This document shows, piece by piece, positions 1-33,985 of a stretch of DNA of 64,000 bases (its first letter is position 1; each line of letters starts with the position of its first letter). The notes below the pieces were generated by a model. It worked only from the letters and a program-made list of their open reading frames with translations. It did no database searches and was not told where the DNA came from. The stretch spans positions 62,001 to 126,000 of the forward strand of contig CDMY01000218.1 in assembly GCA_001179505.1 (NCBI GenBank), in the 5' to 3' direction. A program made the translations under genes and the position numbers. Source of the DNA: Vitrella brassicaformis CCMP3155. Taxonomy: Eukaryota > Protista > Chromerida.

Positions 1-954
1 AAGGCGGCCTTCAACTTCTCGTGGGACACCATCGCCCGCCAGACCCGTGACGTCTACTACGAGCAGATGAACCGCCACGACGCCCCGTACGCCAGCTACC
101 ACCTGGGCGACGCCACACTGGCCCACGTGCTGATGGGCTCGGCCATGTACAACAACATGGGTGTCTTCGACCCCAACGAGGGCGCCGCGCGCGGCCTGGC
201 CCTGCACAAGATGATCCGCCTGTTTGGCTGCGGGCTGGGCGGCGACGGGTACATGACCTTCATGGGCAACGAGTTCGGCCACCCGGAGTGGATCGACATG
301 CCGCGGGCGGGCAACGGGTGGTCGCACTCACACGCGCGCCGCCGATGGGACCTGGCGGACAACAAGGACCTCAAGTTCAAGAACTTCGAGTTCTTCGAGG
401 CGTGTTTGTTGCGCTGGGAGAGCAAGCTCCAGTGGATGGCCGCCCCCTCCGAGAAGCTCATCGTCTGCATGCCGAGCGACAAGGTCGTCGCCTTCGAGCG
501 GGGCCCCTGCCTCTTCCTCTTCAACTTCCACCCCACGGCCTGGTACAGCCAGTACCGAATCGGCACCTCATCCACCACTCCCCTCCTCGCAGCACTCGAC
601 ACCGACGAGGGCCGGTTCGGCGGCCTTGACCGCCACCAGGACGCGCACCTGAAGCCGTTCCCCATCGGGGAGGGCTGGAATGAGTGCGATGGGTCGATCT
701 TGGTCGACCTTCCAGCCCGCACCGGCCTGGTGCTGGCGCCGGTGGACGTGCTCGAGAAGGCGCGCCGGACGGCGGTCAAGGGCGAGGAGGTCCTGGCCAT
801 GGACGTGGACGACTTCGTGTCGTCCCTGCCGAGGTGGAAGATCAGGGCCAACGGGGCGGCGCCCGCCACCAGTGGCAGCGTCGGCACGGCCATCAAGGGC
901 GGCGTGTCGTCGATGCCTGTGGGGGGCGTACGGCCCATGAAGAATGGCTTCTGA
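1..954 (+). CDS. 3' part of a 1,4-alpha-glucan branching enzyme-like (GH13) protein, 5' end outside the window; preceded in frame by a GT-B glycosyltransferase-like terminal helix
   Basis: Frame 1 is open from base 1 (KAAFNFSWDTIARQTRDVYYEQMNRHD...). It contains branching-enzyme C-terminal motifs RGLALHKMIRL, GGDGYMTFMGNEFGHPEWIDMPRAGNGWS..ARRRWDL and VVAFERG.CLFLFNFHP, and RFGGLDR in the C-terminal beta domain. Confidence 0.85.
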   Translation, partial: KAAFNFSWDTIARQTRDVYYEQMNRHDAPYASYHLGDATLAHVLMGSAMYNNMGVFDPNEGAARGLALHKMIRLFGCGLGGDGYMTFMGNEFGHPEWIDMPRAGNGWSHSHARRRWDLADNKDLKFKNFEFFEACLLRWESKLQWMAAPSEKLIVCMPSDKVVAFERGPCLFLFNFHPTAWYSQYRIGTSSTTPLLAALDTDEGRFGGLDRHQDAHLKPFPIGEGWNECDGSILVDLPARTGLVLAPVDVLEKARRTAVKGEEVLAMDVDDFVSSLPRWKIRANGAAPATSGSVGTAIKGGVSSMPVGGVRPMKNGF

Positions 955-1226
955 GCGAATGAGGGAGGGAGGGATGGAGGTCGCCGTGCCGACCACACGA
1001 GCAGTCCGGCTAGCTCAGCTCGTTTTTCCTTCCTCGGTTGGCTTGGCTGCTGCCTGGATTGCTCGGCTGGCGTGACGTGGCCTGCCCTGCTGGTGCGCGT
1101 GGTCGGTAGGCTCCTGTTGCTCTCTGTCCGCGATGTGTTTGCTTATGCCCATACATGTGTGTGTGTGTGTGCGTGTCGATGTGGTCTGCATTTTTCTGGT
1201 TTGGGAGCGCGGGCACAGCAGCAGAG

Positions 1227-1261
<35 letters not shown>

Positions 1262-3702
1262 TGCGTGGTTTCTTTCTCTGTCTATCTACCTATCTTTTTT
1301 CTGACGGACAGACAGCCAGACGGGCGGGGATGCAGGCAGGCAGACACGCCGGCATGCCGGTAGGCAAGTTTCTGGGGTCTGCCTGCCTGCCTGTCTGTTT
1401 GGATGGGGCCCTTCTGTGTGTCACGTGCTGTGGTGTCATGTGTCCTGTGTCCTGTGTGGCCCATTGAGGGTGGGCTGGTGAGAGCCAGGGAGGTGGTCAC
1501 TTGACGATGCGTCAATGGTGTGAAAAAAATGAATGGATGGATGGATGGATGGTGCCGAAAGGTCATTGGACCTTATCCGCAGCCAGACGGACAGACAGAC
1601 AGACAGACACCAAGGTAGCGAGCCAGTGTGTAGAGAGAGATGCACCCCACCCTCAGATGCAATCAATGCCTGCAATGCCACTCACGCCACCCACCATGGG
1701 GCGTTTTGTAGTTCTCGCGGCCCCCTCTCTCTTGCCGGGCGGGCGGGCGGGGGTGCGATTGAACGGTTAAGTCCATCCACCGTGTGGCGCTGTGTGTGTG
1801 GCTGACGTGTATGATAGCCAGACAGACAGACTGACGGGTGTCGGTCGGTGGCTGCCTGTGTTGTGCTTGTGGGAGGCAGGCAGGTGTGCTTGTGGGAGGC
1901 AGGCAGGTGCGGAGCGGACACTTTCAAGAAAGAGGCGTCGATGTATGGATGGAGGGATGGATGGGTAAAATGGGTGCGTGAGTGAGTCTTTTATGGCGGG
2001 TGGTGACCTTGTCTTGTGTGCCGGGGCCACATCTGTCTGTCAAGATGTCTGTCTTGCTTTATCCAGTTCGTCCTAATGTTTCCCTCCCCTCCCTCCCTCG
2101 CTGCCACGTTTCTTGTGTACCATGGTGTGACCACCAGCCGGCCTGCCTGCCTGCCTGGGTGTCAACAGACAGACGGACAGACAGGCAGACAGACAGAGGT
2201 GTAAGTAAGCATGACGGCCGGCAGCACACGTCACGGTCCCTCCTTGGTCTGCAAATGCAGCGAGACGGCCCGGCCTTGCTTGCCTTCTTTCGCTTCCTTT
2301 CACTTCCCCTACTACCACTCACTTCACTCACTGCGTATTGTATGGCAGCGCAATTTTCAACAAGCTACCTCCCTCCCTGCCCATCCGATCCAAGCATTTT
2401 TCTTTTGCTTGCCTGAGAGTGATTTTTGATGACCTACCCTACCGAATTCTTCGCCTGCCTACCTGTTTCTCTCTCTCTCTCTCTCTCTGTGGGCCTGCCT
2501 GCCTGCCTGGTCTGTCTGCCTTGTCTGCCTTGTCTGTCATGCCTGTCAACACCAATTTTGAATCATCCTGGAGAGAGCTTCGGCTTGAGGTTTTGTCGTC
2601 TCGCTCACTCACTCAGTCGCTCGCCCGTCGTGTCGTCGCTCTCTGCTGCCTCTGCTGCCTAAGATCCTATCTTCATGCCTGGCTCCCTCCCTGTCTGCCT
2701 GTCTGCCATGTGTGCGTGCCTTCCTGCCTGCCTGCCTGCCGTGCTGTGCTGTGCTTTGCTGTGCTGCCTCACTCACTGACCACCGTCTTTTTCGGTCCTA
2801 TCTATCAATCCACTTTCCCCCACTCCCCAACGTGCCGTCAGTCAAGTCAGATTGAGCATCGATGCGTGGCTATTTAACACACGATGCCGACCTGCCTGCC
2901 TGACACTGCCTGCCTGCCTGTCTGCCTGCGATTATGTGACTGTTGTGCTGCTGCGAGAGAGCTTTTCAACGTGCGCGAGCTGAGTGTGTGAGCGAGTGGG
3001 TGCGTGAGCGTGCCGGCCGGCGATTTGTGGCGTGGCGTGGCGTGGCGCACGGCGCGGCGGTGGGCCTCTTTGTCAGACATGGATGGATCGATGCGATTGA
3101 TGGACGCGATGGATGGATGGATGACCTACCTGCCCGGTTGATTGATGCGTGTGTGTCTGTGGCTGTGGCTGAGGCTACGTGAGCGTCGGCGGTGTCTTGT
3201 CTGTCTGGTGTGGTGGATGTACGTGTCTGAGTGTGTGTGTGTGAGTTAAGACTTGTGATGATGGACTGACTGAAGCTTGCTTGAACTAACCCTTCACAAT
3301 GCAGGCCTGCATCACGCCACGCACTCACACACGGAGCACACGAGCAGCAGTCTGTCTGCCGTGTATGTGTGTGCCGAAAACTCGGCCAGCGCCCAACGAT
3401 GCACTCGGTCATGTCTATCGCACCCCCAGCCGCCCCTCTCTCTCGCTCTCTCTCTCTCTCAGCCAGCAGCAAGGAGGAGGAACCTGCAGATCCACCACCA
3501 GCAGCAGCAGCCAACCACGCACACGCACACACACACACACAGGGCACGTGCACGCTCACACAAAAAGGTGGTCGGTGGGTCGGTCGGTGAACTGATCTCT
3601 CTCCCCCCTCGCCCCCCCTCTGGCCGAATATATCCCTGCTATCAAATCCACCCATCCGCCGCGACAAACCCCTCCCTCCTCACTCTCTCTTTCACAAACC
3701 TC

Positions 3703-6700
3703 TCACTCAGCACCAGCACCACCACCACCAGCAGCAGGCACTGGCAGCGCATCAAAGATGTCCCGGCACGTGGGTGGCGGCCCCAGGTAGCCCACACACT
3801 CTCGTCTGATCTTGTTGGCCACCTCGCGGGCCGTCGCGATCAGCTCGGGCGTCCACCGGGCGTACTGGTACCGCGCTACGAGGGCGGCAGGGTCCTCCTT
3901 CAGCGACGCCAGGGCGCCGCTGAGGTCTGGCGGGAGCTCGCTCGTCGCCTCGTACACCTTCTTGCTGATGGGGTCGTACAGCGACAGGTAGTGGTTCTGC
4001 GAGGAGGAAAGAAACCGACCGAACCAATGGCGACGACCGAACCAATGGCGACTGACCTTCCATCTCTCTCTNNNNNNNNNNNNNNNNNNNNNNNNNNNNN
4101 NNNNNNNNNNNNNNNNNNNNNNNNNNNNNNNNNNNNNNNNNNNNNNNNNNNNNNNNNNNNNNNNNNNNNNNNNNNNNNNNNNNNNNNNNNNNNNNNNNNN
4201 NNNNNNNNNNNNNNNNNNNNNNNNNNNNNNNNNNNNNNNNNNNNNNNNNNNNNNNNNNNNNNNNNNNNNNNNNNNNNNNNNNNNNNNNNNNNNNNNNNNN
4301 NNNNNNNNNNNNNNNNNNNNNNNNNNNNNNNNNNNNNNNNNNNNNNNNNNNNNNNNNNNNNNNNNNNNNNNGGTTGTGCTCACGTGCAGGAAGAGTCGTG
4401 GGCACCAGTGCTTCTCGTCGTCTGTGTCTTCTTGGTGGTATCGGTACTTGGTGTCGTGGACCAAAGGGCACTGCAGGGCGTTCGCTACGTGTGACCGAAT
4501 CTGCACCCACCCCACACGACACGACACGACACGAGCAAGGCGTCCATTCCCCCGCCTCTCTCTCTCTCTCTCTTCTGTGTGTGTGTGTTGACCGTGTCGA
4601 CCAAGCTAAGCTGACCTGGTGTGTGCGCCCCGTGTCGATTTTGACATTTAGCAGCCCGTAGAACCTGTCGCCATGCCGCTCCTTGTACACCTGGCGTAAG
4701 ACAGACAGAGAGACAGACACACTGACAGTAACGCACCGGCACAACACAACAACAAGCCCCACCCACCACCCTCCCTCCCATCGACCAGCCCACCCACCTT
4801 CTGAAGGCTGTAGTGGGTGACGGCCTGCAGCCAGGACTCCGTCTCGCCCAGCTGCTGCTGCTGCCCGTCGTCCCACGGGGCTCTGGCGATTGTGTGGCTG
4901 TACATGCCCCGTCCCTGAATCGTCTTATGGTTCTTGGTCACCACCAGCTGCCAGTCGATCGTCCCGATGGGTGGCGTGGCGAAGGGCGGGTCGTTGCGGA
5001 AGCGAATCGCTCGGTTCAGCCCGATGTGGTCGTGGGGGTTGAGCCGCAGCATCGGCAGGCCTGAGAGGAGGCAGGTATACAGCTTGGTGAAGCCCCTGCC
5101 TCGGTCGCGCTCGGTCTTGAGGGCGGTGAAGGCGGCGTGCGTCTTGGCCGCCACGATGAGGCCGGACGTCTCATAGTCTAAACGCTGCAGGAATCCGCAC
5201 CGGCACTCGTCGTTGGCCTGAAGGAGGATGGGGTGAGCGAGGCCGTCTGAAGGCCGAGAGAGAGAAACAGAGAGAGACCCGTGAAAAGACCGGAGGGAAA
5301 AAGGGCCGGCCGCTGGTGTGTTCTGTGTGTGTGTCCGAGTGTGGTGGTTACCGAGTTCCTGCTGCGCCCATAGGTGAATCTCCCGCCTGAAGTGGAAGTC
5401 GCGCCTTCTCATGGCGTCGAGCGAGTAGAGGTGGAGTGATGAGCTGCCCCTGTCGTATTGGCAGATCCAGTTGGGCGGCTTGTAGATGATCCAAAAGTGG
5501 CCGAGGTCACGCACCACACGCGGCCACTCCCAATCGCTCAGAAACGCCCCACGGCCCGCACCAGCACCACCACCAGCAGCAGCAGCAGCACCCCGAGGAA
5601 CAGCCACGGCGGGTGCGGCGGCAGCTGCTGCCGATGCTGCTGCAGCAGGTCGCGCCGGTGCCGCCGGTTTCTGTGGCTTGGCCTTTCTCTTGATAGGGGC
5701 GGTGGGCATGCGCGACATGGGGGAAGGGGCGGGGCGCTTCTGGGGCAGACACGGGGGCGCGGGGGGCGCGATGGCCGCAGCGGCGGCGGCAGCTGATGCC
5801 GATCCAGACGCTTGGGGGCTCTCGGCAGAGGGCAGCACTTCTGACACACGCACAGACAGATGGCTGGCTCTTCGATGCGTCATGATGTCCTTCTTGTGGT
5901 GTGCTCATTGCTGCTGACGCACCNNNNNNNNNNNNNNNNNNNNNNNNNNNNNNNNNNNNNNNNNNNNNNNNNNNNNNNNNNNNNNNNNNNNNNNNNNNNN
6001 NNNNNNNNNNNNNNNNNNNNNNNNNNNNNNNNNNNNNNNNNNNNNNNNNNNNNNNNNNNNNNNNNNNNNNNNNNNNNNNNNNNNNNNNNNNNNNNNNNNN
6101 NNNNNNNNNNNNNNNNNNNNNNNNNNNNNNNNNNNNNNNNNNNNNNNNNNNNNNNNNNNNNNNNNNNNNNNNNNNNNNNNNNNNNNNNNNNNNNNNNNNN
6201 NNNNNNNNNNNNNNNNNNNNNNNGTATCGGTACTTGGTGTCGTGGACCAAAGGGCACTGCAGGGCGTTCGCTACGTGTGACCGAATCTGCACCCACCCCA
6301 CACGACACGACACGACACGAGCAAGGCGTCCATTCCCCCGCCTCTCTCTCTCTCTCTCTTCTGTGTGTGTGTGTTGACCGTGTCGACCAAGCTAAGCTGA
6401 CCTGGTGTGTGCGCCCCGTGTCGATTTTGACATTTAGCAGCCCGTAGAACCTGTCGCCATGCCGCTCCTTGTACACCTGGCGTAAGACAGACAGAGAGAC
6501 AGACACACTGACAGTAACGCACCGGCACAACACAACAACAAGCCCCACCCACCACCCTCCCTCCCATCGACCAGCCCACCCACCTTCTGAAGGCTGTAGT
6601 GGGTGACGGCCTGCAGCCAGGACTCCGTCTCGCCCAGCTGCTGCTGCTGCCCGTCGTCCCACGGGGCTCTGGCGATTGTGTGGCTGTACATGCCCCGTCC

Positions 6701-9700
6701 CTGAATCGTCTTATGGTTCTTGGTCACCACCAGCTGCCAGTCGATCGTCCCGATGGGTGGCGTGGCGAAGGGCGGGTCGTTGCGGAAGCGAATCGCTCGG
6801 TTCAGCCCGATGTGGTCGTGGGGGTTGAGCCGCAGCATCGGCAGGCCTGAGAGGAGGCAGGTATACAGCTTGGTGAAGCCCCTGCCTCGGTCGCGCTCGG
6901 TCTTGAGGGCGGTGAAGGCGGCGTGCGTCTTGGCCGCCACGATGAGGCCGGACGTCTCATAGTCTAAACGCTGCAGGAATCCGCACCGGCACTCGTCGTT
7001 GGCCTGAAGGAGGATGGGGTGAGCGAGGCCGTCTGAAGGCCGAGAGAGAGAAACAGAGAGAGACCCGTGAAAAGACCGGAGGGAAAAAGGGCCGGCCGCT
7101 GGTGTGTTCTGTGTGTGTGTCCGAGTGTGGTGGTTACCGAGTTCCTGCTGCGCCCATAGGTGAATCTCCCGCCTGAAGTGGAAGTCGCGCCTTCTCATGG
7201 CGTCGAGCGAGTAGAGGTGGAGTGATGAGCTGCCCCTGTCGTATTGGCAGATCCAGTTGGGCGGCTTGTAGATGATCCAAAAGTGGCCGAGGTCACGCAC
7301 CACACGCGGCCACTCCCAATCGCTCAGAAACGCCCCACGGCCCGCACCAGCACCACCACCAGCAGCAGCAGCAGCACCCCGAGGAACAGCCACGGCGGGT
7401 GCGGCGGCAGCTGCTGCCGATGCTGCTGCAGCAGGTCGCGCCGGTGCCGCCGGTTTCTGTGGCTTGGCCTTTCTCTTGATAGGGGCGGTGGGCATGCGCG
7501 ACATGGGGGAAGGGGCGGGGCGCTTCTGGGGCAGACACGGGGGCGCGGGGGGCGCGATGGCCGCAGCGGCGGCGGCAGCTGATGCCGATCCAGACGCTTG
7601 GGGGCTCTCGGCAGAGGGCAGCACTTCTGACACACGCACAGACAGATGGCTGGCTCTTCGATGCGTCATGATGTCCTTCTTGTGGTGTGCTCATTGCTGC
7701 TGACGCACCTCGGTCGTCTGGGGTATCTTCGTCGAAAAGCTGTGGGTCATCTCTGTGCTTGGCCCTCTTGTGGTGCTCCCTCTTGGCCTCCCGGAGCGCA
7801 CTGTCCACGCCGCCGTGCTCCTCGACGAGGAAAGTGACGGGCTTGGACAAGTGGTTGCTGTTGCTCACCACACGCACACACCAGGAACTATCAAACACAC
7901 ACACACACACACACATACAGACCGAGACAGAGGGGAGGGGGCGGAGGGCATCCACACACACATCCGTCTCTCTCTCTGCCTGTGTGTGTGGATGGATGTG
8001 ACCACCATACCAGTCGGAGCTCATCCAGTGTACTTCGTCAGGCACGACCCCCTCGGCAATGAGCTGGTGCGCCTCGCGCTCGTGCGTCTGCCGCGCCTTC
8101 TTGTCGATCCTCACCCCACCCGCCACCTCACTCTCGTCGCCCTCGTCGTCCATGTCGTCGTCACGATTCGACGGCAGCTCGCCAGACGGGTACTCGCTAG
8201 ACGCGTCGTCGCACCCCGCCACATCCATCGGCAATAGTGGTGCTGCCCCTGCACCTGCACTAGCTGGTGCTGCAGCAGAGACCGATGCCGCTGCTGCTGC
8301 TGCTGCCGCTGGTGGTGCTGGTGGTGGCTGCTGTTGCTGCTGCTTCTTGGGTTTGGCGAATCGGATGACGGCGTCGTCGTCACTCTCGTCACCAGCACCA
8401 GCAGGAGCCGGTGGTTTAGGTGGCTTGGGTGCGGTGGTGGGTGGTCTCTCGGATTTATCGATCTTCTTCTTGGAAGGCTCGGGGGGCCCGGGGAGCCGCT
8501 TGCGATCACGGTCACGGTCACGGTCACGATCACGGTCACGATCAGGCGGGGCGGCGCGTGCTGCCGAGCTCATGAGCTTCTGCCTGATTGACGGACGCAT
8601 GGAGGAGACCGGGACAGACAGGGAGAGAGCGCGTGACGGGTGGGAGGGAGCGTGGGTGTTGGTGTGAGCACTGACTGACCTCATTTCTCGCTTGCGCCTG
8701 AATTTCTCCACGGTCTCTTCGCAGCGATCGAGGCTGCAGGTGTCGGGAAAGGCACATTAGACAGACGTACGCACAGGGGCCCACAGACGATTGATGCTTA
8801 CAGACTTACTTCTCGAGAGGCTCCCAGGTGTTCTCGCTCTCGTCATAGCCCTGATACACAGAACAGAGAAGGGGAACAGGTGTGTGGGAGGTGCGGCTGG
8901 CTCGGTTCGCTGAGCCAGTCCGGTCAAATCGCGGACTGACCTTCCACTTGACGAGGAACTTCTCAACGCCGTCAATGACCATGAGATCACGAATGTCCTG
9001 AATGCGCCACAATGCATCGCACACCTCATCATATATCCGACCAGCAGGTACGTGTGTGTTGTGTTGCGCATCTTCCTTCCCCCACACACACCATTATCCC
9101 ACGATGCACCTACGTACCTGAACTTCGTACCGATCCTCAGACATGTCCGTGTCCGACCCGTCCGAGGCGCTGGCACCATCACCACCACCGCCACCGCCAC
9201 TCTCGCTACGCCCTCCATCACCCTCACCCTCACCCTCGCCCTCCTCGTCGCCAACCTTCTTGAGCCGACGGCGCTTCACAGGCGGACCAGCATCACGGGC
9301 CACACGGGGCGAGGGACGGTCAGGACGGTCGGAACGGTTGTCAGGCGTGGCCGGCTACACACACACACGACACACAGATAGGAGGGATGGGCTGTTGAGG
9401 GGTAGGGTGGGGTAGGGTGGGGTGGTCCCGTCAGTCGGTGATTTACCCGTTTCGTCGTCTTCTTCTTGGGCCCCTTGACGGCGTCGGCCTGGCCCTTGAG
9501 GAAGCTGGCCTTGCCCGCACCCGGCCCCACACCACTCGAGCCCTTCCGCACCAGCGACTTCTTGTCCCTCACACTCGCACCCGCGTCGCTGCGATTGTTT
9601 CTCTCCTCCTTGCTGATGAGAGGACGAGCCGGCACCGAAGACGCCTGCGATGTGGGAGTGAGCGCCACTTTCCGCCCAGACTTGTCAGCGGGAAGTTGTT

Positions 9701-11260
9701 TCGGCGCGAGTGTGGGAGGCCTCGCTGCTGCTGCTGCTGCAGATGGGCCAGAGGGCTGCTTTGACGAGGGGGAAAGAGCCAGAGGCCTCTCGCCGGTGGG
9801 CTGGCGAGGGCTGCCGGGCGACACCATGCGAACAGAGGGATGGGGTGGCGGGTGGGAGGAGAGGGGCACTTTGGGGAGCTTGGGCGAAGTGGACACCTTC
9901 TTGACAAGTGGCGGGGCAGCAGCAGCCGAGGCAGCCGCACTCCCAGTAGCACCAGCCGCCGCCGGTTTCTTCTGTGTTGGCTTGTTCTTGTTTTTGTTTT
10001 TCTTGGTCTTGTCTTTGACGTCTGCTGCCGCGCGGATGGACGCGTCGGCCTGGATGACGCCGGGGGGCAGGTCGGTCTCCTTGTAGGTGCCCTTGTCGAA
10101 GAGCTCGCGGACCTTCTTGCTCTTGGACTTCTTCCACTTGACCTCCTCCCTCTTGCTGCCACCCTTCGCCTCCAAGACGATCTTGGGCTCAGTCTTCATG
10201 CGCTCGAGCAGGGCAACGGCCTCGTCATAGGCAGCTGAGCACATACACACACACGGGGCACCCGCAGGTATAAAGACAGTGGGGGTGGGGGTGGGGGTGG
10301 GCGTGTGGGGGTGGAGGTGTTCGCACCTTTGAGGGAGCCGCGTTTCTGTGCGTTGATGAACTTGTACCGGAACCAGCCGCCGTTCTTGGCAACCTGAGTG
10401 TCGTCAGGGGGCCACTGACACACACAGAGGGGGGAGAGATCAAGGGGCCACAAGTGAGCAGAGCAGGCAGTCTAATCCGTATCCCTCACCTCACCTCCCC
10501 TCACCTTGGCATGGTAGCCCTGGGAGGACTCTTGGTTCTCGCCCTTCTTGGCCCAGTAGGCGACACCCGGCACCTTCGCAAACCCCTGCTTGTCCAGCCC
10601 GCCACCCTGCCTGGGCGGCCGACCTCCCTTCTTGCTCTTCTTGCCCTTCTTCTTGCCGGCTTCGCCAGCACCTGCTGCACCACTGCCACCAGCATCGGCA
10701 CCGGCACTCTCGTCTTGGTCGGTCTCGCTTCCTGATGAGTCGGACTCGCCGTCGGAGCTGCCCGACGAAGAGGAGCCAGAAGAGCCGCTCGAGCCGTCAG
10801 AGTCAGAGCCGGAGCTGCCACTGTCGCTGCTGTCATCACCACCACCACCACCACCCGCCTCTTCCTTTTTCTCAGCCTCCTTCTCCTTGCCTTTGCCGCC
10901 CCCGGCGCCCTTGGCCGCACTCTTGTTCTTCTGCTGCTGTTGCTGCTGTTGCTTGCTCTTGGTGGCACCACCACGGCCGCCACCACCGGTGGCGTCAGCA
11001 GGAGAGCCACTGGCGGCCGATGGGAGTGCCGGTGCTGAGGGCTCCTCTCGCTGGAGAGGGCCTTTTGACGCACTGCGCTTGGGGAACGGCTGGGGGGGCT
11101 GGTTTGTGTCTGTGTTCGTGGGGAGGAGAGACGGGGTGGGTGCTGCAGGGCGGCGAGGGGGGTCCTTGGCCGCTTCGCCGGCGTCGGATGGCTTCGGCTG
11201 GCTCTCGACGTCCACACCACCGAAGCCAAGCCAGATGGGCACTGACGCTGATGCACTCAT
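3703..11260 (-). CDS. AP2-like domain + chromodomain + RluA-family pseudouridine synthase multidomain protein (~1,388 aa, 14 exons)
   Basis: Exons 11260-10505, 10414-10327, 10234-9447, 9354-9118, 8997-8941, 8850-8810, 8733-8680, 8583-8011, 7857-7709, 7626-7138, 7032-6584, 6476-6402, 6286-(gap; =4500-4384 in the other copy), 3996-3703. All introns are GT-AG with compatible phases; total 4167 nt, divisible by 3. Chromodomain: YEVQDIRDLMVIDGVEKFLVKWKGYDESENTWEPLENLDRCEETVEKF. PUS: WIIYKPP, GFLQRLDYETSGLIVAAK, KLYTCLLSG, VKIDTGRTHQIRSH, PLVHDTKY, RLFLHNHYLSLYDP. The start codon is tentative. Confidence 0.85.
4072..4371. other. Assembly gap, 300 N (within an intron of the PUS gene)
   Basis: Run of exactly 300 N. 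Confidence 0.99.
4438..7709. repeat. Apparently identical 1,486-bp direct duplicate (4438-5923 = 6224-7709), probably a contig overlap left unmerged across a scaffold gap
   Basis: Offset is 1786 throughout, and the ORF track gives identical 411-aa ORFs at 4648-5883 and 6434-7669. The first copy ends exactly at the 5924 gap and the second starts exactly after it. No substitutions were noticed, even in introns. Confidence 0.85.
5924..6223. other. Assembly gap, 300 N
   Basis: Run of exactly 300 N between the two identical copies. Confidence 0.99.
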
Positions 11261-12359
11261 CCCTCAATCACACCGAACACCAAGCTAGAAGCACCGGCGG
11301 GAGCCGACGACTCGCCTGACGCACAAATCACACACACAGATCGCAGCCAGAGTCCAAAGTCGGGCATGCGTCGACGTCATGAGCTCGATCTCTCCCAGCC
11401 CTCGCTGAATCGGCTCTCTGCCTTTCGCTCCCTCCTCTGCCTGCCCCTGTGCGCCTGCCTTGTCCCTTACCAGTTCGCAGCGACGCCCAAAGGTCCTCAC
11501 AGCCCATCTGAAGGCATTGGGAGAGAATCAAGGCTGAAGTCGGGCCGCTAGAGGCAACTGGAAAACTGACAACTCACTCAATCAGCCAAATCAGTCCGAA
11601 CAACTCACCAGGTGCGATTGCCGACCGTCGAGAAAAGACTGGGGGTTGCGGGGGCCACTTGTTCCCCAGTCCACTGCCACACGGCTTCGTTTGCTGCACA
11701 TGGAAGGGCCAATAGCCTGGTGCGAGGACTCGTGACCATCGTGACACTGTCTGCCGCTCTGACATCATCTTGCTGTGCTGCAAATCGTGTGTGTGTCTGC
11801 AGGAACGCTCCTCTGTTCACGACCACCCGTCCATTGTCGGCGTGCCATCGACAGAGGCCGCTGCTCTTCATGTGCGACGACAGGGACCTGCACTTCGACT
11901 CAGGTGTGGGCGGGAACAGAACAATGAACAGGTAGGTGGATCCGGATGGTCTGATGTGTACATGGCTTCAGTGCCGGTGACGGTGGCCCTTCAGCTGAGG
12001 GGCATACACCTGAGGCAGCAGAAATATCACCTGCTGCACAGACGGAGCCATTCACTGGTCAATTAATCCTCACGGGGGGGTGTTTGTTCTCTTGTGGTCG
12101 ACGGGAGGATCCGTGTGGACCGTCTTGCAGCTGTACCGTATACGTACGTGCAGGCTGTATGTGTGCGTCTGTGTGTGTGTGTGTACTGTGCAGTACTGCC
12201 GTTCCGTCTTGGTGTCTGCCTCCGCCTTTCACCAAAGCAGGAAACAGACCTACGCGGGAGCGAGGGAGCTGCTGCAGGCCGTAAGGAGGCCGAACGGCAT
12301 CACGTGCAGCGACACCAACAACACGACCGTGCTCCCTTTCATCCGTTCAGCTTGAGAAC

Positions 12360-12710
12360 ATGGACAGTGCGAGGAAGAGAAGACGGCGGCAACGCCCAGT
12401 GACACAGCCGTCAGGGTCACCAGAGGAAAGACCAGGCCCCAGTGAATTTAAGGCGGCAGAAGAAGGGGAGAGCGAGGAAGGTAAGACACCGACTGAACAC
12501 ACCCACGCGCAGGCAGAGAATGGTCTCTCTTGTGTTGCGGACTTTTCAGGGGGGATGGAATCGTCTTTCTCCGAGTTCGAAGGGGACACAGCAAGAGAGG
12601 ACGAGCTGCCTGGAGAAAGGGGTGTGGTTGGCCGCGTGTCGTCGCCCGACCAGCCCCTCCCGCTCTCCAGTCGGTTTGAGCCGCTCGGCCCTCGTAGGCA
12701 CAAAATGTGA
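12360..12710 (+). CDS. Small hypothetical protein; its 3' exon lies in the left arm of the inverted duplication
   Basis: ORF MDSARKRRRRQ...HKM*. A possible phase-compatible intron runs 12481-12549 (gtaaga...ttttcag). The C-terminal ~35 aa are shared with the minus-strand ORF at 14905-15213. Confidence 0.3.
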   Translation: MDSARKRRRRQRPVTQPSGSPEERPGPSEFKAAEEGESEEGKTPTEHTHAQAENGLSCVADFSGGMESSFSEFEGDTAREDELPGERGVVGRVSSPDQPLPLSSRFEPLGPRRHKM

Positions 12711-15085
12711 CAAGGGGGTGCGAGGGCGAGACACAGACGGTACTTTGCTGGCACGTCAACCGTTCGTGTGTATACTCCTGTCGTTCCTTGTCGTGTCTCC
12801 ACGAACAACAGCACAGTGTAGCATAACACGCACAGCAGGCATTCTCGCACAAGGCGACACATGAGAATGTAACATCGCACGAATCCAAGAGCTAAGTGAT
12901 TGCAGCAACTCAGCTTAAAGTTTGTCGCGGGAGGGCCCGCAGCATAGCCCGCACACACACAGCAACCACAGCACATGACAAGACGGACGTCTGTGCACTG
13001 ACTGCGGCGAAGCCAGCAATACTCAAGCCGTCTATTGTGTGTGCTCACGTACATGTAGCTCCTGCAGCAGCCCCGTTGCTGCAGTCATTGTATGGGAGAC
13101 ATAGCCAACAAAGAGACGTGATTATTCGCTGGCTTTGTCAGGAATGCCCTCTCTGTATATGTGCGTATGTCTGTGTTCCGGCTCATTACGAGGGAGGAGA
13201 CGAATGGATTTACGGTGGGGGCCGTGTGGCAAAAGACGGCGTCTCCCAGGGGATGCCACCATGGGTAACGCCATCGCTCGGATGTGCCCTCCTTACGGCC
13301 GCAAGGGGAAGAAGCGCAGAAGGAGAGGCCACCGAGACTTGGCCAAAAAGGGAAAGTATGCAAAGGAGGCAACTCAGGCAGGAGTCGACGCCTCTCGGAG
13401 GGTCGGCGCGGCCGCAAGGAAGATGGGCGGGAAGCTCGGCAAGGCGGGGCTGCAGGCAAGCAGGCAGTTTGGCGCACTCGCAAGGTTATTCGGCTCCACC
13501 ACTGGCAATCTCATCCAAGAGTTCGTCACGCGGGGGTCAGTGCACACGGGAATTCAGGCAGGGGAGGGTGGGTATGCATCTCTGTCCGGCATTTTGTTTT
13601 CAGCTTCAAGGCTTACTTCTTCCTGACCTTTCTGATCTACTTCACTGGGGCCGTGGTCGCCCTGTCGACATACACCTACGTGCCCCGCCGCGAGGACGGG
13701 GAGATTGTGTGCCCGATGACGCTCAACGTCTACTTTCTCTGTGGGGCCTTCTTCATTCAGGTGTGGTCAGAAGCCTTTACGTGGGTCAGCATGACTGTCT
13801 GTCTGTCTGTCTGTTTGTCTTGATGTCTCTGGTCGTCGCGCAGGGCTTCTTGGCTGCATACACGGCTTGGGGGTACTCTTACATCGAAAAGTAAGTGTGT
13901 GCCGCGGGTGGGCCCATAGAGGAAGACAAAGCGGGTGATTTCTCTCCCTCCCTCCCGCTGGCCTGCATGCAGGCTGCCCGAGGGTTCGTTCACTGAGCTG
14001 TCGGCCTTTCAGTACTTGATCGGCTTCATGATCAAGGTGGTGCCTACCTGGAGCAGGCTGCTGCATGTCTTCAACTTCTTCCAGCTGCTCATAGCCGTCT
14101 TCTACGCACTTGTGCTGCCCGAGTGCAACCTCCACCTTGTGCGCGTCACCCTCTGTATGTGCACAGCAAGCAGAGGATGGATGGGCAGACGACTGAAGAA
14201 GTCCGTGTGTGTCCCCTCCGTTTTTTCTTCGCTTAGTTGTGTTGGGCATTGTGTGGTGGTGCATTATTCTTGTGGGCATCACGGCCAAGAGACACTTCCC
14301 CGTCCCGCCCACCATATTCGAGCCCGTCAGGCCTGGTGAGCCAGAACACACACACACACACACGCACACACGGACAGACAGACAGACAGACAGACAGACA
14401 GAGAGGCCATGCCTGACAAAGCCAGCAGATAATCATGTCTCTTTGTTGGCTATGCCCCCCATGCAATGCCTGCAGCAACGGGGCTGCTGCAGGAGCTGCA
14501 TGTACGTGAGCACACAAATAAATAGACGGCTTGAGTATTGCTGGCTTCGCCGCAGTCAGTGCACACACGTCCGTCTTGTCGTGTGCTGTGCTTGCTGTGC
14601 GTGTGTGTGTGTGTGTGCAGACTATGCTGCGTGCCCTCGGGCCGTGACAAAGCTGAGTTGCTGCTGGGGTTGATTGGATTTTGGACTCTGTGGGAATGTG
14701 ACATTAGTATTCTCTGTGAGCCGTCTTGGCGTCCAATGAGCTCACCTCAGCTCTGCACGATGTGTCGAGAGACCGCACTGCCTGTCCTTTCCAATGAACC
14801 GATGAGGAGAGAGGAGGCATGAAAGCCAAAGGCAGCAAGGAGCACCCACGGACCGTCAGTGTCTCAGCAAAGTAAGGTCTGTGTCGTTCCCTCGCCCTCC
14901 CTTGTCACATTTTGTGGGTATGGGCGCCGAGCGGCTCGAAGCGACTGGAGAGGGGGAGCGGCTGGTTAGGCGACAACACGCGGCCAACCACACCCCTCTC
15001 TCCAAGCACTTCGTCCGGTCCTGCCGTGTCCTCATCTGACTGGGACAGGGACGATTCTGCCCCCTGAACGGTCCGCAACACAACC
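12530..15085. repeat. Diverged inverted duplication: left arm ~12530-13150, right arm ~14400-15085
   Basis: Example: ggggtgtggttggccgcgtgtcgtcgcccgaccagcc (12618+) vs the reverse complement near 14965-15000. Also gacaagacggacgtctgtgcactgactgcggcgaagccagcaatactcaagccgtc (12978+) vs the reverse complement near 14525-14580. The middle of the arms aligns poorly. Confidence 0.85.
13261..14647 (+). CDS. Multi-pass membrane protein of unknown function with a possible N-myristoylation/palmitoylation start (MGNAIARMC)
   Basis: Spliced exons give a basic N-terminus, then hydrophobic segments (FKAYFFLTFLIYFTGAVVALS; VYFLCGAFFIQ; FQYLIGFMIKVVP; LLHVFNFFQLLIAVFYALVLPEC; VLGIVWWCIILVGITAK). The last exons (14476-14501, 14621-14647) give EPVRPATGLLQELHTMLRALGP*. 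Confidence 0.7.
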
Positions 15086-15254
15086 GATGGAACAAGTAGG
15101 CAAGAGTACATCGAATACGAATGAAGATCGGCGTGTCCTTCATGCATTCGTTCACTGATCCTTCTCTTCACATGAGTCCTGATGCACGCGACAAGCCAAA
15201 GTGAGAAAGACATGGACCTACAGCTCCACTGTCAGCGCCAAATGGATCCTGGCG

Positions 15255-16314
15255 TCACTTCTTCTTGCCCCCCTTGGCTCCCTTGCCCTTGTCGTCCTTC
15301 ACCTCCTCGGCCTCTTCCTTGGGGGCATCTGGGCTCGGCAGCGGAAACACGAGAGAAAAAGGTGATGTTGGCGGGCTCAGCAGTTCCTCTTGCTGCTCTT
15401 GGTCCGCCCCATCACCTCCAGCAATGGCTGTGGTCTCCTCCCTCTTCTTGCGTCCCGCCGCTTCCTTTGATCCGGGGCGGCTCGGTGGCCCTCCACTGGC
15501 TGGCGAGGATGGCGCTTCTGGGGGAATGGCAAGGAGGCTGTATGTCTTATGGAGGGCCACCATTGTTCTCGCCATCGCAGTGGGCGCCGCTCGCAAGTCG
15601 AGACACCGGCCGTCCTCTTCGATGTCGACCTTTGACACGTCTGACGCCAAGACAGAAGCGAAAACAGAGGTGGAGAGACACGTAGTGTCCAGGTGTGTCA
15701 TGGTCGCCTACAATTCATGACGTATTCATGTCTCTCCAGCTCCTTGAGAATGGCGCCTCTCCTCTTGACCGCCGCCTCCGCCTCCTCAAGAGTCTTCTTC
15801 TGGGCTTCAAGCTTAGTTCTCAGCTCTCCTCGTGGCGTGAGAGCTTCGGGCGGCTCTTCAGTGGGGGCCTCCTTCCCTCCTCCCTTCTTGGCATCTTTCT
15901 TGGCATCTTTGCCCTTGGCTGCCGCCGGTGGGGGTTGTGGTGGCTGCTCCTCTGCTTCAGCAGCGCTCGCAGGCCGACTGGCAGCTTTCTCTTCTAGCTC
16001 CTTGAGGGAAGATTCCACCTCTGCAGGCGGGATACAGAATGACATTCCATGCCCTTCCCTGTCTTGAGGGAGAATTGTATCTGTCTCCCCCTCCTGACCC
16101 GCGATTTGTTTTCTCTGCTTCTCCTGCAGGCGATTCAGTTTCAGGCTGGCGCTTTTGGTCTCCGCTTTTTTTGCTTCAAGCTGAAAAGCATTTCAAAGCA
16201 GAAAGATGAGTTTTGTGTGCTTGTTCCTCCCGCCAAGACCCCTCACCCGCCGCGCACCTACCTGCTTTGCCAGGTCAGTCATCGCCCTGGTCAAAAGAAA
16301 ATCCAGCAGAATGT
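15255..16314 (-). CDS. Lys/Glu/Ala-rich coiled-coil hypothetical protein (5' end unresolved)
   Basis: Exon-like blocks LEAKKAETKSASLKLNRLQEKQRKQ, EVESSLKELEEKAASR...LEAQKKTLEEAEAAVKRRGAILKELERH and ...KDDKGKGAKGGKKK*, separated by GT-AG introns. Confidence 0.5.
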
Positions 16315-33685: not shown

Positions 33686-33985
33686 NNNNNNNNNNNNNNN
33701 NNNNNNNNNNNNNNNNNNNNNNNNNNNNNNNNNNNNNNNNNNNNNNNNNNNNNNNNNNNNNNNNNNNNNNNNNNNNNNNNNNNNNNNNNNNNNNNNNNNN
33801 NNNNNNNNNNNNNNNNNNNNNNNNNNNNNNNNNNNNNNNNNNNNNNNNNNNNNNNNNNNNNNNNNNNNNNNNNNNNNNNNNNNNNNNNNNNNNNNNNNNN
33901 NNNNNNNNNNNNNNNNNNNNNNNNNNNNNNNNNNNNNNNNNNNNNNNNNNNNNNNNNNNNNNNNNNNNNNNNNNNNNNNNNNNNN
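33686..33985. other. Assembly gap, 300 N
   Basis: Run of exactly 300 N. Confidence 0.99.

What the first reader, a model, noticed from the sequence alone, without database searches (positions are those of the whole stretch)
3703..11260. AP2 DNA-binding + chromodomain + RluA pseudouridine synthase in one protein
Seen: the ORF track shows several unrelated-looking ORFs, but 13 canonical GT-AG introns join them without frame break (4167 nt coding). The key junction 7709|7626 (GAC GAC CGA G|AA GTG CTG) links the chromodomain half to the PUS half in frame. The product has an AP2-like domain (~10580-10190), a textbook chromodomain (9130-8690), an RD-repeat/low-complexity linker, and a complete RluA fold with the catalytic RLD Asp. 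Established: ApiAP2 domains bind DNA, chromodomains read methyl-lysine histones, RluA enzymes isomerise U to pseudouridine without a guide RNA, and a pseudouridine synthase is reported to be needed for Toxoplasma stage differentiation. Inference: this could be a chromatin-tethered RNA writer that pseudouridylates nascent transcripts at loci chosen by DNA sequence and histone mark. I do not know of this three-domain architecture having been described.
Basis: partly seen in the sequence, partly recalled or inferred. Interest (0 to 1): 0.9.

Follow-up and report, generated by a model that had tools for sequence, protein, structure and literature searches.

The report
Chromodomain fused to pseudouridine synthase
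In the alga Vitrella brassicaformis, one intron-rich gene joins a histone-mark-reading chromodomain to an intact RNA pseudouridine synthase, a combination I could not find elsewhere and one the public annotation misses; the claimed third part, an AP2 DNA-binding domain, could not be verified.

Summary
The locus is in Vitrella brassicaformis CCMP3155 (contig CDMY01000218.1).

- **Chromodomain:** real (Pfam 59.5 bits, full length, aromatic cage conserved).
- **RluA-type synthase:** complete, with the catalytic Asp, all family-invariant residues and an RluA/C/D-like fold. It has no S4 domain.
- **AP2-like segment:** unverified. It has no Pfam, PDB or database match, and the structure model was poor.
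- **Gaps:** block 4372-5923 is a 100 % identical scaffolding duplicate of 6158-7709. DNA depth shows one copy and the cDNA passes once. Gap 4072-4371 lies inside an intron.
- **Annotation:** the public record holds only a 488-aa synthase (CEL94387.1) that starts inside intron 9 in the duplicate block. The 900-aa N-terminal half is unannotated.
- **Open points:** no RNA covers the exon 8-9 or exon 3-4 links. The chromatin-tethered RNA-writer function is inference.

I found no chromodomain-synthase protein in any search. Unchecked scan notes report similar genes on other pieces of this genome.

The parts
3640..11312 (-). Whole transcription unit as far as RNA shows it. The 5'UTR reaches at least 11312 and the 3'UTR at least 3640. 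The span includes the artefactual duplicate block and two N gaps.
   Evidence: RNA contig 11145-11312 crosses the ATG unspliced. cDNA contig L001 ends at 3640.
10505..11260 (-). Exon 1. ATG at 11260 with an in-frame TGA just upstream. Low-complexity G/S/K-rich N-terminus, plus the start of the AP2-like segment.
   Evidence: RNA joint 10505|10414
10327..10414 (-). Exon 2, the middle of the AP2-like segment.
   Evidence: RNA contig record 6, 293 nt = 167+88+38; GT-AG sites
9447..10234 (-). Exon 3. End of the AP2-like segment (AAYDEAVALLERMK), then a basic low-complexity linker.
10191..10600 (-). AP2-like segment (model residues about 222-296, split over exons 1-3). Unverified as an AP2 domain.
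   Evidence: No Pfam, PDB or database hit, and a poor structure model.
9118..9354 (-). Exon 4. Contains the KRRRLKK basic cluster, an acidic G/E stretch and the first chromodomain strand (DRYEVQ).
   Evidence: intron 3 (9446-9355) is predicted only
8941..8997 (-). Exon 5, chromodomain core (…FLVKWK).
8810..8850 (-). Exon 6, chromodomain (GYDESENTWEPLE).
8680..8733 (-). Exon 7, the C-terminal helix of the chromodomain.
   Evidence: RNA joint 8680|8583
8685..9141 (-). Chromodomain (model residues 616-672), rebuilt across introns 4-6. The HP1-type aromatic cage Y/W/Y is conserved.
   Evidence: PF00385 59.5 bits, E 3e-16, 1-53/53. Best PDB matches are CBX5 and HP1.
8011..8583 (-). Exon 8. RD dipeptide repeat (8549-8499), then a Pro/Ala/acidic linker.
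   Evidence: RNA contig 8456-8582
7709..7887 (-). Exon 9. The acceptor at 7888 fits the RNA contig, which reaches 7871; the alternative acceptor at 7864 does not. Composition is strongly coding-like in the model frame (GC by codon position 0.67/0.35/0.81).
7627..7708 (-). Intron 9 (82 nt, GTGCGT…CAG), the junction between the chromodomain half and the synthase half. It contains ATG 7669, the counterpart of the annotated start codon.
   Evidence: RNA joint in X1, absent from the DNA runs
7138..7626 (-). Exon 10. Ala/Pro-rich linker and the start of the synthase core.
6584..7032 (-). Exon 11, the synthase catalytic core. The catalytic Asp codon (QRLD) is at 6964-6962.
6402..6476 (-). Exon 12 (…TGRTHQ).
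6224..6286 (-). Exon 13, the part readable before gap 5924-6223. The rest of the exon is read only in the duplicate block (4437-4384).
4384..4500 (-). Exon 13 as read in full inside the duplicate block.
   Evidence: cDNA L001
3703..3996 (-). Exon 14, the synthase C-terminus and stop codon (3705-3703).
   Evidence: cDNA L001 joins 4384 to 3996
4372..5923 (.). Redundant contig, an exact copy of 6158-7709 placed between two 300-N gaps. It is a scaffolding artefact, not a second gene copy. It carries the annotated start ATG at 5883.
4072..4371 (.). Assembly gap, lying inside intron 13.
5924..6223 (.). Assembly gap between the true locus and its redundant copy. The letters missing from exon 13 here are supplied by 4372-4437.

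Best explanation
This is one nuclear gene of Vitrella brassicaformis. It encodes a protein of about 1390-1398 residues. The catalytic module is a stand-alone, guide-independent RluA-family pseudouridine synthase that has lost the S4 RNA-binding domain of its RluD/RluC-like relatives. In its place is a roughly 1000-residue, largely disordered, basic N-terminal arm. That arm contains an HP1-class chromodomain with an intact methyl-lysine cage, an RD dipeptide repeat and several NLS-like clusters. Shown: the gene structure, the in-frame splice joining the two halves, the two domains, and the catalytic residues. Inferred: the protein is nuclear, the chromodomain docks it on methylated histone tails (H3K9me or H3K27me type), and the synthase therefore isomerises uridines in RNAs made or held at such chromatin. 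The AP2-like segment may add DNA contact but is unproven. My odds are about 0.85 that a single fused protein is made, and about 0.4-0.5 for the chromatin-tethered mechanism given the fusion.
For: All 13 introns are GT-AG and the ORF is unbroken. The RNA joint 7709|7626 links exon 9 in frame to the synthase N-terminus and removes the annotated ATG 7669; it is absent from the DNA runs. Exon 9 has no in-frame ATG and shows strong codon-position GC bias in the model frame. RNA contigs of similar depth (4.3-6.6) are scattered over the whole gene in X1. The RNA-supported 5'UTR has an upstream in-frame stop. The chromodomain scores 59.5 bits, and its cage residues align to HP1 Y24/W45/Y48. The synthase matches PF00849 over its full length and keeps every invariant residue of a 43-sequence RluA-family alignment, including the catalytic Asp. 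Its predicted fold matches RluC, RluA, RluD and RPUSD4. No S4 domain was found. There is no signal-peptide-like N-terminus, and there are nine NLS-like clusters. Human synthases, including an RluA-family member, act co-transcriptionally on chromatin-associated pre-mRNA (bioRxiv 10.1101/2020.08.29.273565).
Against: No single RNA contig runs from the chromodomain to the synthase. The exon 8-9 and exon 3-4 links have no RNA support, and 8024-8423 and 8824-9623 have no RNA coverage. Scans for spliced junctions in metagenome contigs found nothing. The key joint rests on one 217-nt contig from one run. The nearest relatives of the synthase are rRNA enzymes (RluD/RluC) and organellar PPR/FAST fusions, so the substrates could be classical. 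Chromodomains can also bind RNA or non-histone proteins. Localisation, histone binding and activity are all untested. No orthologue was found, so conservation cannot support a function.
Confidence: 0.5

Rival explanations
1. The fused protein is the same, but the chromodomain is not a histone reader. It acts as an RNA- or protein-binding adaptor replacing the lost S4 domain, and delivers the synthase to conventional substrates (rRNA, snRNA, tRNA), for example in the nucleolus.
For: The closest sequence and structure relatives are 23S rRNA synthases RluD, RluC and RluA. S4 is missing and needs a substitute. From established knowledge, some chromodomains (MOF, CBX7, cpSRP43) bind RNA or non-histone peptides. 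RD repeats and basic low-complexity arms are typical of RNA-processing proteins.
Against: The chromodomain is of the canonical HP1/CDY/MPP8 class with all three cage aromatics, not a chromo-barrel. Nothing here points to a particular RNA substrate.
Confidence: 0.3
2. There are two products. The main synthase protein is the annotated 488-aa form or a shorter one, made from an internal promoter. The chromodomain protein is separate, and the spliced 7709|7626 RNA is a minor read-through form.
For: The public annotation has the 488-aa model starting at the ATG equivalent to 7669. In X2 the synthase exons have 2-3 times the depth of the few N-terminal contigs, and there is no coverage at 7624-8423. 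The exon 8-9 link is unverified.
Against: The annotated start lies in the artefactual duplicate block immediately after a gap, so the model was simply truncated there. The only RNA seen at 7626-7709 is spliced and removes that ATG. Frame 1 is open from 8756 to 7709 with or without intron 8. Exon 9 has no in-frame ATG, and its only ATG opens an out-of-frame ORF. A 3' bias in poly(A)-selected libraries would explain the X2 depth.
Confidence: 0.12
3. The protein is an organellar (plastid or mitochondrial) RNA-modifying enzyme like the PPR/FAST-synthase fusions, and the chromodomain works as a protein-interaction module as in cpSRP43.
For: The nearest eukaryote-type relatives in the 1.84-billion-protein library are PPR- or FAST-fused synthases. 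Vitrella is photosynthetic. From established knowledge, cpSRP43 uses chromodomains in the plastid.
Against: The N-terminus has no hydrophobic signal peptide (the highest 15-residue Kyte-Doolittle mean is 0.98), and chromerid plastid import needs one. The protein has many NLS-like clusters. No ankyrin, PPR or FAST repeats were found.
Confidence: 0.05

Closest known systems
Bacterial RluD / RluC / RluA (RluA-family 23S rRNA pseudouridine synthases)
   Same: The catalytic domain is the same: a full-length PF00849 match, the catalytic Asp in the (H/Q)RLD motif, the TGRTHQIR motif, about 30-36 % identity, and Foldseek target TM-scores of 0.7-0.78.
   Different: There is no N-terminal S4 domain. There are three lineage-specific insertions in the core, a roughly 1000-residue N-terminal arm with a chromodomain, and a eukaryotic nuclear gene structure with 13 introns.
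Eukaryotic RluA-family enzymes RPUSD1-4 / yeast Pus5, Pus6, Pus8, Pus9
   Same: They are stand-alone, guide-independent synthases with the same fold (RPUSD4 5uba and RPUSD1 5vbb; Atlas clusters). An RluA-family member is reported to act co-transcriptionally on pre-mRNA.
   Different: To my knowledge none carries a histone-reader domain. This protein is not a close orthologue of any of them; the only hit above E 1e-10 in the representative library is itself.
HP1 / CBX5, CDY, MPP8, LHP1 chromodomains
   Same: It belongs to the same domain class (E 5e-13 to 1e-10), and the aromatic cage residues are conserved in the alignment.
   Different: There is no chromoshadow domain or other HP1 part. Here the chromodomain sits in the middle of an enzyme-bearing protein.
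Chromodomain-enzyme fusions (SUV39H1/Clr4, CMT3, CHD, CDY, chromo-integrases)
   Same: The design principle is the same: a methyl-lysine reader delivers an enzyme to marked chromatin (established knowledge; SUV39H1, Clr4 and the plant chromomethylase appear among the chromodomain hits).
   Different: In those fusions the enzyme acts on histones, DNA or nucleosomes. Here it is an RNA-modifying enzyme.
Myzozoan PPR- or FAST-fused RluA-type synthases (P0005, P0009, P0013)
   Same: An RluA-type catalytic domain has lost S4 and is fused to a different targeting module. These are the nearest non-self eukaryote-type hits.
   Different: Their targeting modules are helical-repeat RNA binders, presumably organellar. 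Identity to this protein is confined to about 50 residues around the catalytic motif.
AP2/ERF and ApiAP2 DNA-binding domains (PF00847)
   Same: Only a motif-level resemblance seen by eye: GV…W, an A-K-W stretch, GGWFRYKF, then a helix containing AYDEA, in the order of three strands plus a helix.
   Different: No profile, PDB or homologue match was found and there is no confident fold. The loops would have to be about 6 residues longer than in canonical AP2 domains.

Membership tests
RluA-family pseudouridine synthase (PF00849) | Profile match above the curated threshold over the whole domain | tested here: met
   55.9 bits against a cut-off of 26.8, profile positions 1-151 of 152.
RluA-family pseudouridine synthase (PF00849) | Catalytic Asp in the xRLD motif, plus the conserved Arg, Tyr and TGRTHQIR motif | tested here: met
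   QRLDYETSG aligns to RluD HRLDKDTTG. All 15 invariant columns of the 43-sequence alignment are kept, including R85, L86, D87, Y120, T233, G234, H237 and R240. The one deviation is H to Q before RLD.
RluA-family pseudouridine synthase (PF00849) | Pseudouridine synthase fold | tested here: met
   The AF2 model has pLDDT 72.8. The top Foldseek hits are RluC, RluA, RluD and RPUSD4, E 4e-14 to 1e-12, target TM-score 0.64-0.78.
RluA-family pseudouridine synthase (PF00849) | U-to-pseudouridine isomerase activity | not testable with these tools
   This needs an enzyme assay with an Asp mutant control.
RluD/RluC subgroup | N-terminal S4 RNA-binding domain | tested here: not met
   Pfam found no S4 on the spliced upstream segment at E<=10. 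An S4 HMM built from 37 relatives, run with filters off, scored -0.8 bits.
Chromodomain (PF00385), HP1/Polycomb class | Profile match above the curated threshold | tested here: met
   59.5 bits against a cut-off of 25.1, profile positions 1-53 of 53, on the spliced peptide.
Chromodomain (PF00385), HP1/Polycomb class | Three-residue aromatic cage for methyl-lysine | tested here: met
   In the alignment to Drosophila HP1 (1kna) and CBX5, the Y of DRYEV and the W and Y of KWKGY align to the residues known as the cage; the Glu of ENTWEP is also kept.
Chromodomain (PF00385), HP1/Polycomb class | Binding of methylated histone tails | not testable with these tools
   This needs a peptide array or ITC.
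HP1 proper | C-terminal chromoshadow domain | tested here: not met
   No chromoshadow hit on any ORF piece of the gene.
AP2/ERF - ApiAP2 (PF00847) | Profile match to PF00847 | tested here: not met
   No family at E<=10 for the RNA-confirmed 78-aa spliced segment.
AP2/ERF - ApiAP2 (PF00847) | Sequence relatives that are AP2 domains | tested here: not met
   No AP2 chain among the PDB hits at E<=10. No database protein of 54-171 aa at E<=10; longer proteins could not be searched.
AP2/ERF - ApiAP2 (PF00847) | Three-stranded sheet packed on a C-terminal helix | tested here: inconclusive
   The single-sequence AF2 model has pLDDT 47.6, with two short strands and two helices at low confidence.
Single fused gene (one transcription unit) | mRNA continuity from the chromodomain exons to the catalytic exons | tested here: inconclusive
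   The joints E7|E8 and E9|E10 through E13|E14 are seen in RNA. E8|E9 is not covered; the frame stays open across it either way.

The most novel reading that the evidence does not exclude
The protein is a triple-input RNA writer. A very divergent AP2-type module reads DNA sequence, the chromodomain reads a histone methyl mark, and the tethered RluA enzyme pseudouridylates nascent transcripts only at loci where both signals coincide. This would directly couple the chromatin code to the epitranscriptome.
Probability: 0.12. Interest if true: 0.9.

Novelty: new variant of a known kind. Interest (0 to 1): 0.6.

Why it matters
Pseudouridine synthases are known to act on chromatin-associated pre-mRNA, but how they are brought there is unclear. 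A natural protein that wires a canonical methyl-lysine reader directly to an RluA-type synthase would be a ready-made test case for chromatin-directed RNA modification. It would extend the familiar 'reader plus enzyme' design (SUV39, CMT3, CHD) from histone and DNA substrates to RNA.

It also corrects the public record. The annotated Vitrella protein (CEL94387.1 / A0A0G4EFX1, 488 aa) is an N-terminally truncated model created by a redundant contig and a gap, and about 900 residues, including the chromodomain, are missing from the databases.

The limits are that it is so far a single-species architecture with no detected orthologue, and its function is untested.

Tried and rejected
1. **AP2 domain.** Pfam, PDB sequences, a 5.8-billion-protein word search restricted to 54-171 aa, single-sequence AF2 and the scan's own index by sequence all came back blank or uninformative. 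No multiple alignment could be built because no homologue was found.
2. **Degenerate S4 domain in exons 8-9** (RIDKK…EAHQLIAEGVV looked S4-like by eye). Rejected by Pfam and by a custom S4 HMM with filters off.
3. **Database proteins covering the exon 8-9 linker.** None found.
4. **Spliced E9|E10 and E8|E9 junctions in JGI metagenome or metatranscriptome contigs.** No match.
5. **Real tandem duplication of the synthase part.** Rejected. Identity is 100 %, DNA k-mer depth equals the flanks, and the cDNA passes once.
6. **Other chromodomain-synthase proteins.** None among the 15 hits in the 1.84-billion-protein representative library, the 120 best of 564 hits of 268-854 aa, or the ESM Atlas clusters. 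Literature searches gave nothing.
7. **A Vitrella AP2 domain for comparison** in the part of the neighbouring 1784-aa 'AP2 (weak)' gene held in L002. Nothing usable.
8. **The joint 6512|11320 at depth 89.5 in X1.** Set aside as a low-complexity artefact (27-nt side, non-canonical ends, 8 foreign letters between the sides).

Full report
**Where this is.** The window is from Vitrella brassicaformis CCMP3155, contig CDMY01000218.1 of GCA_001179505.1. The annotated product of the synthase part is CEL94387.1 / A0A0G4EFX1. The public locus L002 is letter-for-letter the reverse of window 1-15883, with the same two gaps.

**Gaps first, as the scan's program asked.** The window has 300-N gaps at 4072-4371 and 5924-6223.
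- The block between them, 4372-5923, is identical to 6158-7709. Over the 1486 bases readable in both copies there are no mismatches.
- In two DNA runs, the contigs over 6224-7334 have the same k-mer depth as contigs over the flanking single-copy sequence: 18.4 against 18.7-21.4 in X3, and 10.2 against 9.7-11.5 in X4. The DNA contigs also run straight through 7709/7710.
- An independent 1255-nt cDNA contig (L001, JGI sample 3300017297) reads 7394-7138 | 7032-6584 | 6476-6402 | 4500-4384 | 3996-3640. The mRNA therefore passes the synthase part once.
- That cDNA takes its last 54 exon-13 bases from the block (4437-4384) and joins 4384 to 3996 across gap 4072-4371.

The block is therefore a redundant contig that overlaps its neighbour by 1486 bp and adds 66 new bases. 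Gap 4072-4371 lies inside intron 13 (donor CAC|GTGAGC, acceptor …CTCGCAG|AAC). Neither gap breaks the reading frame. Any model drawn across the window as it stands contains a false 1901-nt 'intron'. The true intron 12 is 115 nt and is seen in RNA.

**Gene model.** On the minus strand I obtain 14 exons and 13 GT-AG introns of 76-147 nt. The ORF runs unbroken from ATG 11260 to the stop at 3705-3703, giving 1390 aa. With the exon-9 acceptor at 7888 instead of 7864 it is 1398 aa.

RNA contigs from two transcriptome runs (X1, X2) show the following GT..AG joints, and none of them occurs in the DNA runs:
- 10505|10414
- 8680|8583
- 7709|7626
- 7138|7032
- 6584|6476
- 6402|6286

Contig record 6 is 293 nt, which equals 167+88+38. 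This also implies the joint 10327|10234. The cDNA adds 4384|3996.

Residues 917-1390 of the model are identical to residues 15-488 of the annotated protein. Introns 4-6 have no RNA, but only with them does the chromodomain reassemble into a full-length profile match. Introns 3 and 8 are predictions. Intron 8 is a multiple of three with no stop, so the frame is open from 8756 to 7709 whether or not it is removed. The RNA contig at exon 9 reaches 7871, which favours the acceptor at 7888. At the 5' end, an RNA contig (11145-11312) crosses the ATG unspliced, and a TGA lies in frame just upstream.

**The key junction.** Exon 9 ends …GAC GAC CGA G | GTGCGT. After 82 nt, …GTGTCAG | AA GTG CTG continues in frame. 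One 217-nt RNA contig in X1 carries exactly this joint, with 163 nt on one side and 54 nt on the other. The excised intron contains ATG 7669, the counterpart of ATG 5883 where the public 488-aa model starts.

That public model begins in the redundant block, 40 bases after a gap, so it was simply cut off there. Nothing is annotated between window 5883 and 11700. No database protein matches the exon 8-9 linker.

Exon 9 has no in-frame ATG. Its only ATG opens an out-of-frame ORF. Its GC content by codon position (0.67/0.35/0.81) is as coding-like as in the catalytic exons.

What is missing is a single molecule from the chromodomain to the catalytic core. There is no RNA coverage at 8024-8423 or 8824-9623. 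Two scans of metagenome contigs for spliced junctions found nothing. I put the probability of a single fused product at about 0.85.

**Domains.**
- *Chromodomain (model residues 616-672; 9141-8685).* The spliced peptide scores 59.5 bits, E 3e-16, over the whole of PF00385. The best solved relatives are CBX5/HP1α, Drosophila HP1, CDY, LHP1, CBX3 and MPP8. In those alignments the Tyr, Trp and Tyr that form the methyl-lysine cage in HP1 (established knowledge) are conserved. There is no chromoshadow domain.
- *Synthase (about residues 1023-1390).* It matches PF00849 over its full length at 55.9 bits. QRLDYETSG aligns to the RluD catalytic HRLDKDTTG. All 15 invariant columns of a 43-sequence family alignment are kept. 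An alignment-based AF2 model (pLDDT 72.8) matches RluC, RluA, RluD, RPUSD4 and RPUSD1, and shows three low-confidence lineage-specific insertions.
- *Synthase relatives.* The domain is divergent. In 1.84 billion representative proteins only 15 score E<1e-3, and only the protein itself scores below 1e-10. The best other relatives are S4-plus-synthase proteins at about 30-36 % identity. The S4 domain of those relatives is absent here.
- *AP2-like segment (residues about 222-296).* The peptide I tested is exactly what the RNA contig encodes. It has no Pfam family at E<=10, no AP2 chain among the PDB hits and no homologue of 54-171 aa. The single-sequence model has pLDDT 47.6. By eye it resembles AP2 (GV…W, a second strand, GGWFRYKF, then a helix with AYDEA), but it failed every membership feature I could test. 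I put the odds that it is a real, very divergent AP2-type fold at about 0.3.

**How it probably works.** The enzyme is a guide-independent RluA-type synthase that has lost its own RNA-binding S4 domain. It has gained a long basic arm with a canonical reader domain. There is no signal-peptide-like N-terminus, and there are nine NLS-like clusters, including KRRRLKK just before the chromodomain. The simplest reading is a nuclear enzyme docked by its chromodomain on methylated chromatin, acting on RNA made or retained there. The precedent is that human synthases modify pre-mRNA co-transcriptionally (bioRxiv 10.1101/2020.08.29.273565). All of this is inference.

There are three rival readings.
- The chromodomain serves as an RNA or protein adaptor for classical rRNA, snRNA or tRNA substrates (0.3).
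- A separate synthase-only product dominates (0.12).
- The protein goes to an organelle, like the PPR/FAST-fused relatives P0005, P0009 and P0013. The N-terminus argues against this (0.05).

**Comparison and novelty.** The two confirmed parts each belong to well-known families, and 'reader plus enzyme' is a known design (SUV39H1, Clr4 and chromomethylase appear among the chromodomain hits). The new element is the enzyme. I found no chromodomain-synthase protein in the representative library, in the 268-854-aa homologue list, in the Atlas or in the literature. Proteins longer than 854 aa could not be searched by word index, and the representative search used only part of the catalytic domain, so absence is not proven. 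I file it as a new variant of a known kind.

Unchecked notes of this scan report similar genes on other pieces of the same genome. Two describe a chromodomain, one with an AP2-like part, joined to a synthase (s1-212011, s1-218458). Others describe AP2-like-plus-chromodomain genes and divergent AP2 arrays fused to chromatin enzymes (s1-080128, s1-226915). I could not reach those sequences. They may be paralogues or a duplicate scaffold, and they suggest that the N-terminal half derives from a Vitrella AP2-like/chromodomain family. DNA contigs laid at 90 % likeness or more showed no diverged second copy of this locus.

It is correct as a citation (Anderson et al. 2009, listed in PMC9778586). To my knowledge that enzyme is a PUS1/TruA-type protein, so it is only a loose precedent.

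Noticed in passing
window 5923 (= 7709): The redundant contig 4372-5923 begins, in gene orientation, exactly at the last base of exon 9, right on the RNA-supported donor G|GTGCGT. This could be coincidence or a trace of transcript-guided scaffolding.
   Followed up: no
window 11700-12710 (+): A divergently transcribed neighbour gene (194-aa product in the NCBI record) has RNA-supported GT..AG introns at 11718|11802 and 11899|11968. Only about 300-400 bp separate it from this gene's 5'UTR, which suggests a bidirectional promoter.
   Followed up: partly
window 8213: The DNA run X4 (a differently labelled organism or strain) differs from the window by a single A>C in exon 8 over the 6 kb laid. 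X3 shows no difference.
   Followed up: no
window 1-954 and beyond the window start (L002 14930-20129): The end of a 1448-aa gene with CBM_48, Glyco_transf_5, GT4 and Alpha-amylase_C hits lies here. Other scan notes (s1-212010, s1-212176) describe it as a branching-enzyme/GT4 fusion.
   Followed up: no
L002 21013-22181 (about 5 kb outside the window start): This is the start of an annotated 1784-aa gene with a weak AP2 Pfam hit, two genes away from this locus. The part held in L002 showed no recognisable AP2 domain.
   Followed up: partly
window 33686-33985 and 57748-58047: Two further 300-N assembly gaps. Given what happened at this locus, the sequence next to them may also hide redundant contigs and truncated gene models.
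   Followed up: no
P0016:115-488 residues 60-74, 132-150, 170-199 (window about 7140-7180 and 6600-6830): Three lineage-specific insertions in the synthase core have low model confidence. The largest sits between the catalytic strand region and the TGRTHQIR motif.
   Followed up: no
introns throughout 3700-11300: Most introns carry GT/CA or GA microsatellite runs, which translate as THTHT or CVCVCV. These probably break the short-read RNA and DNA contigs at 7335-7386 and 7883-7932.
   Followed up: no
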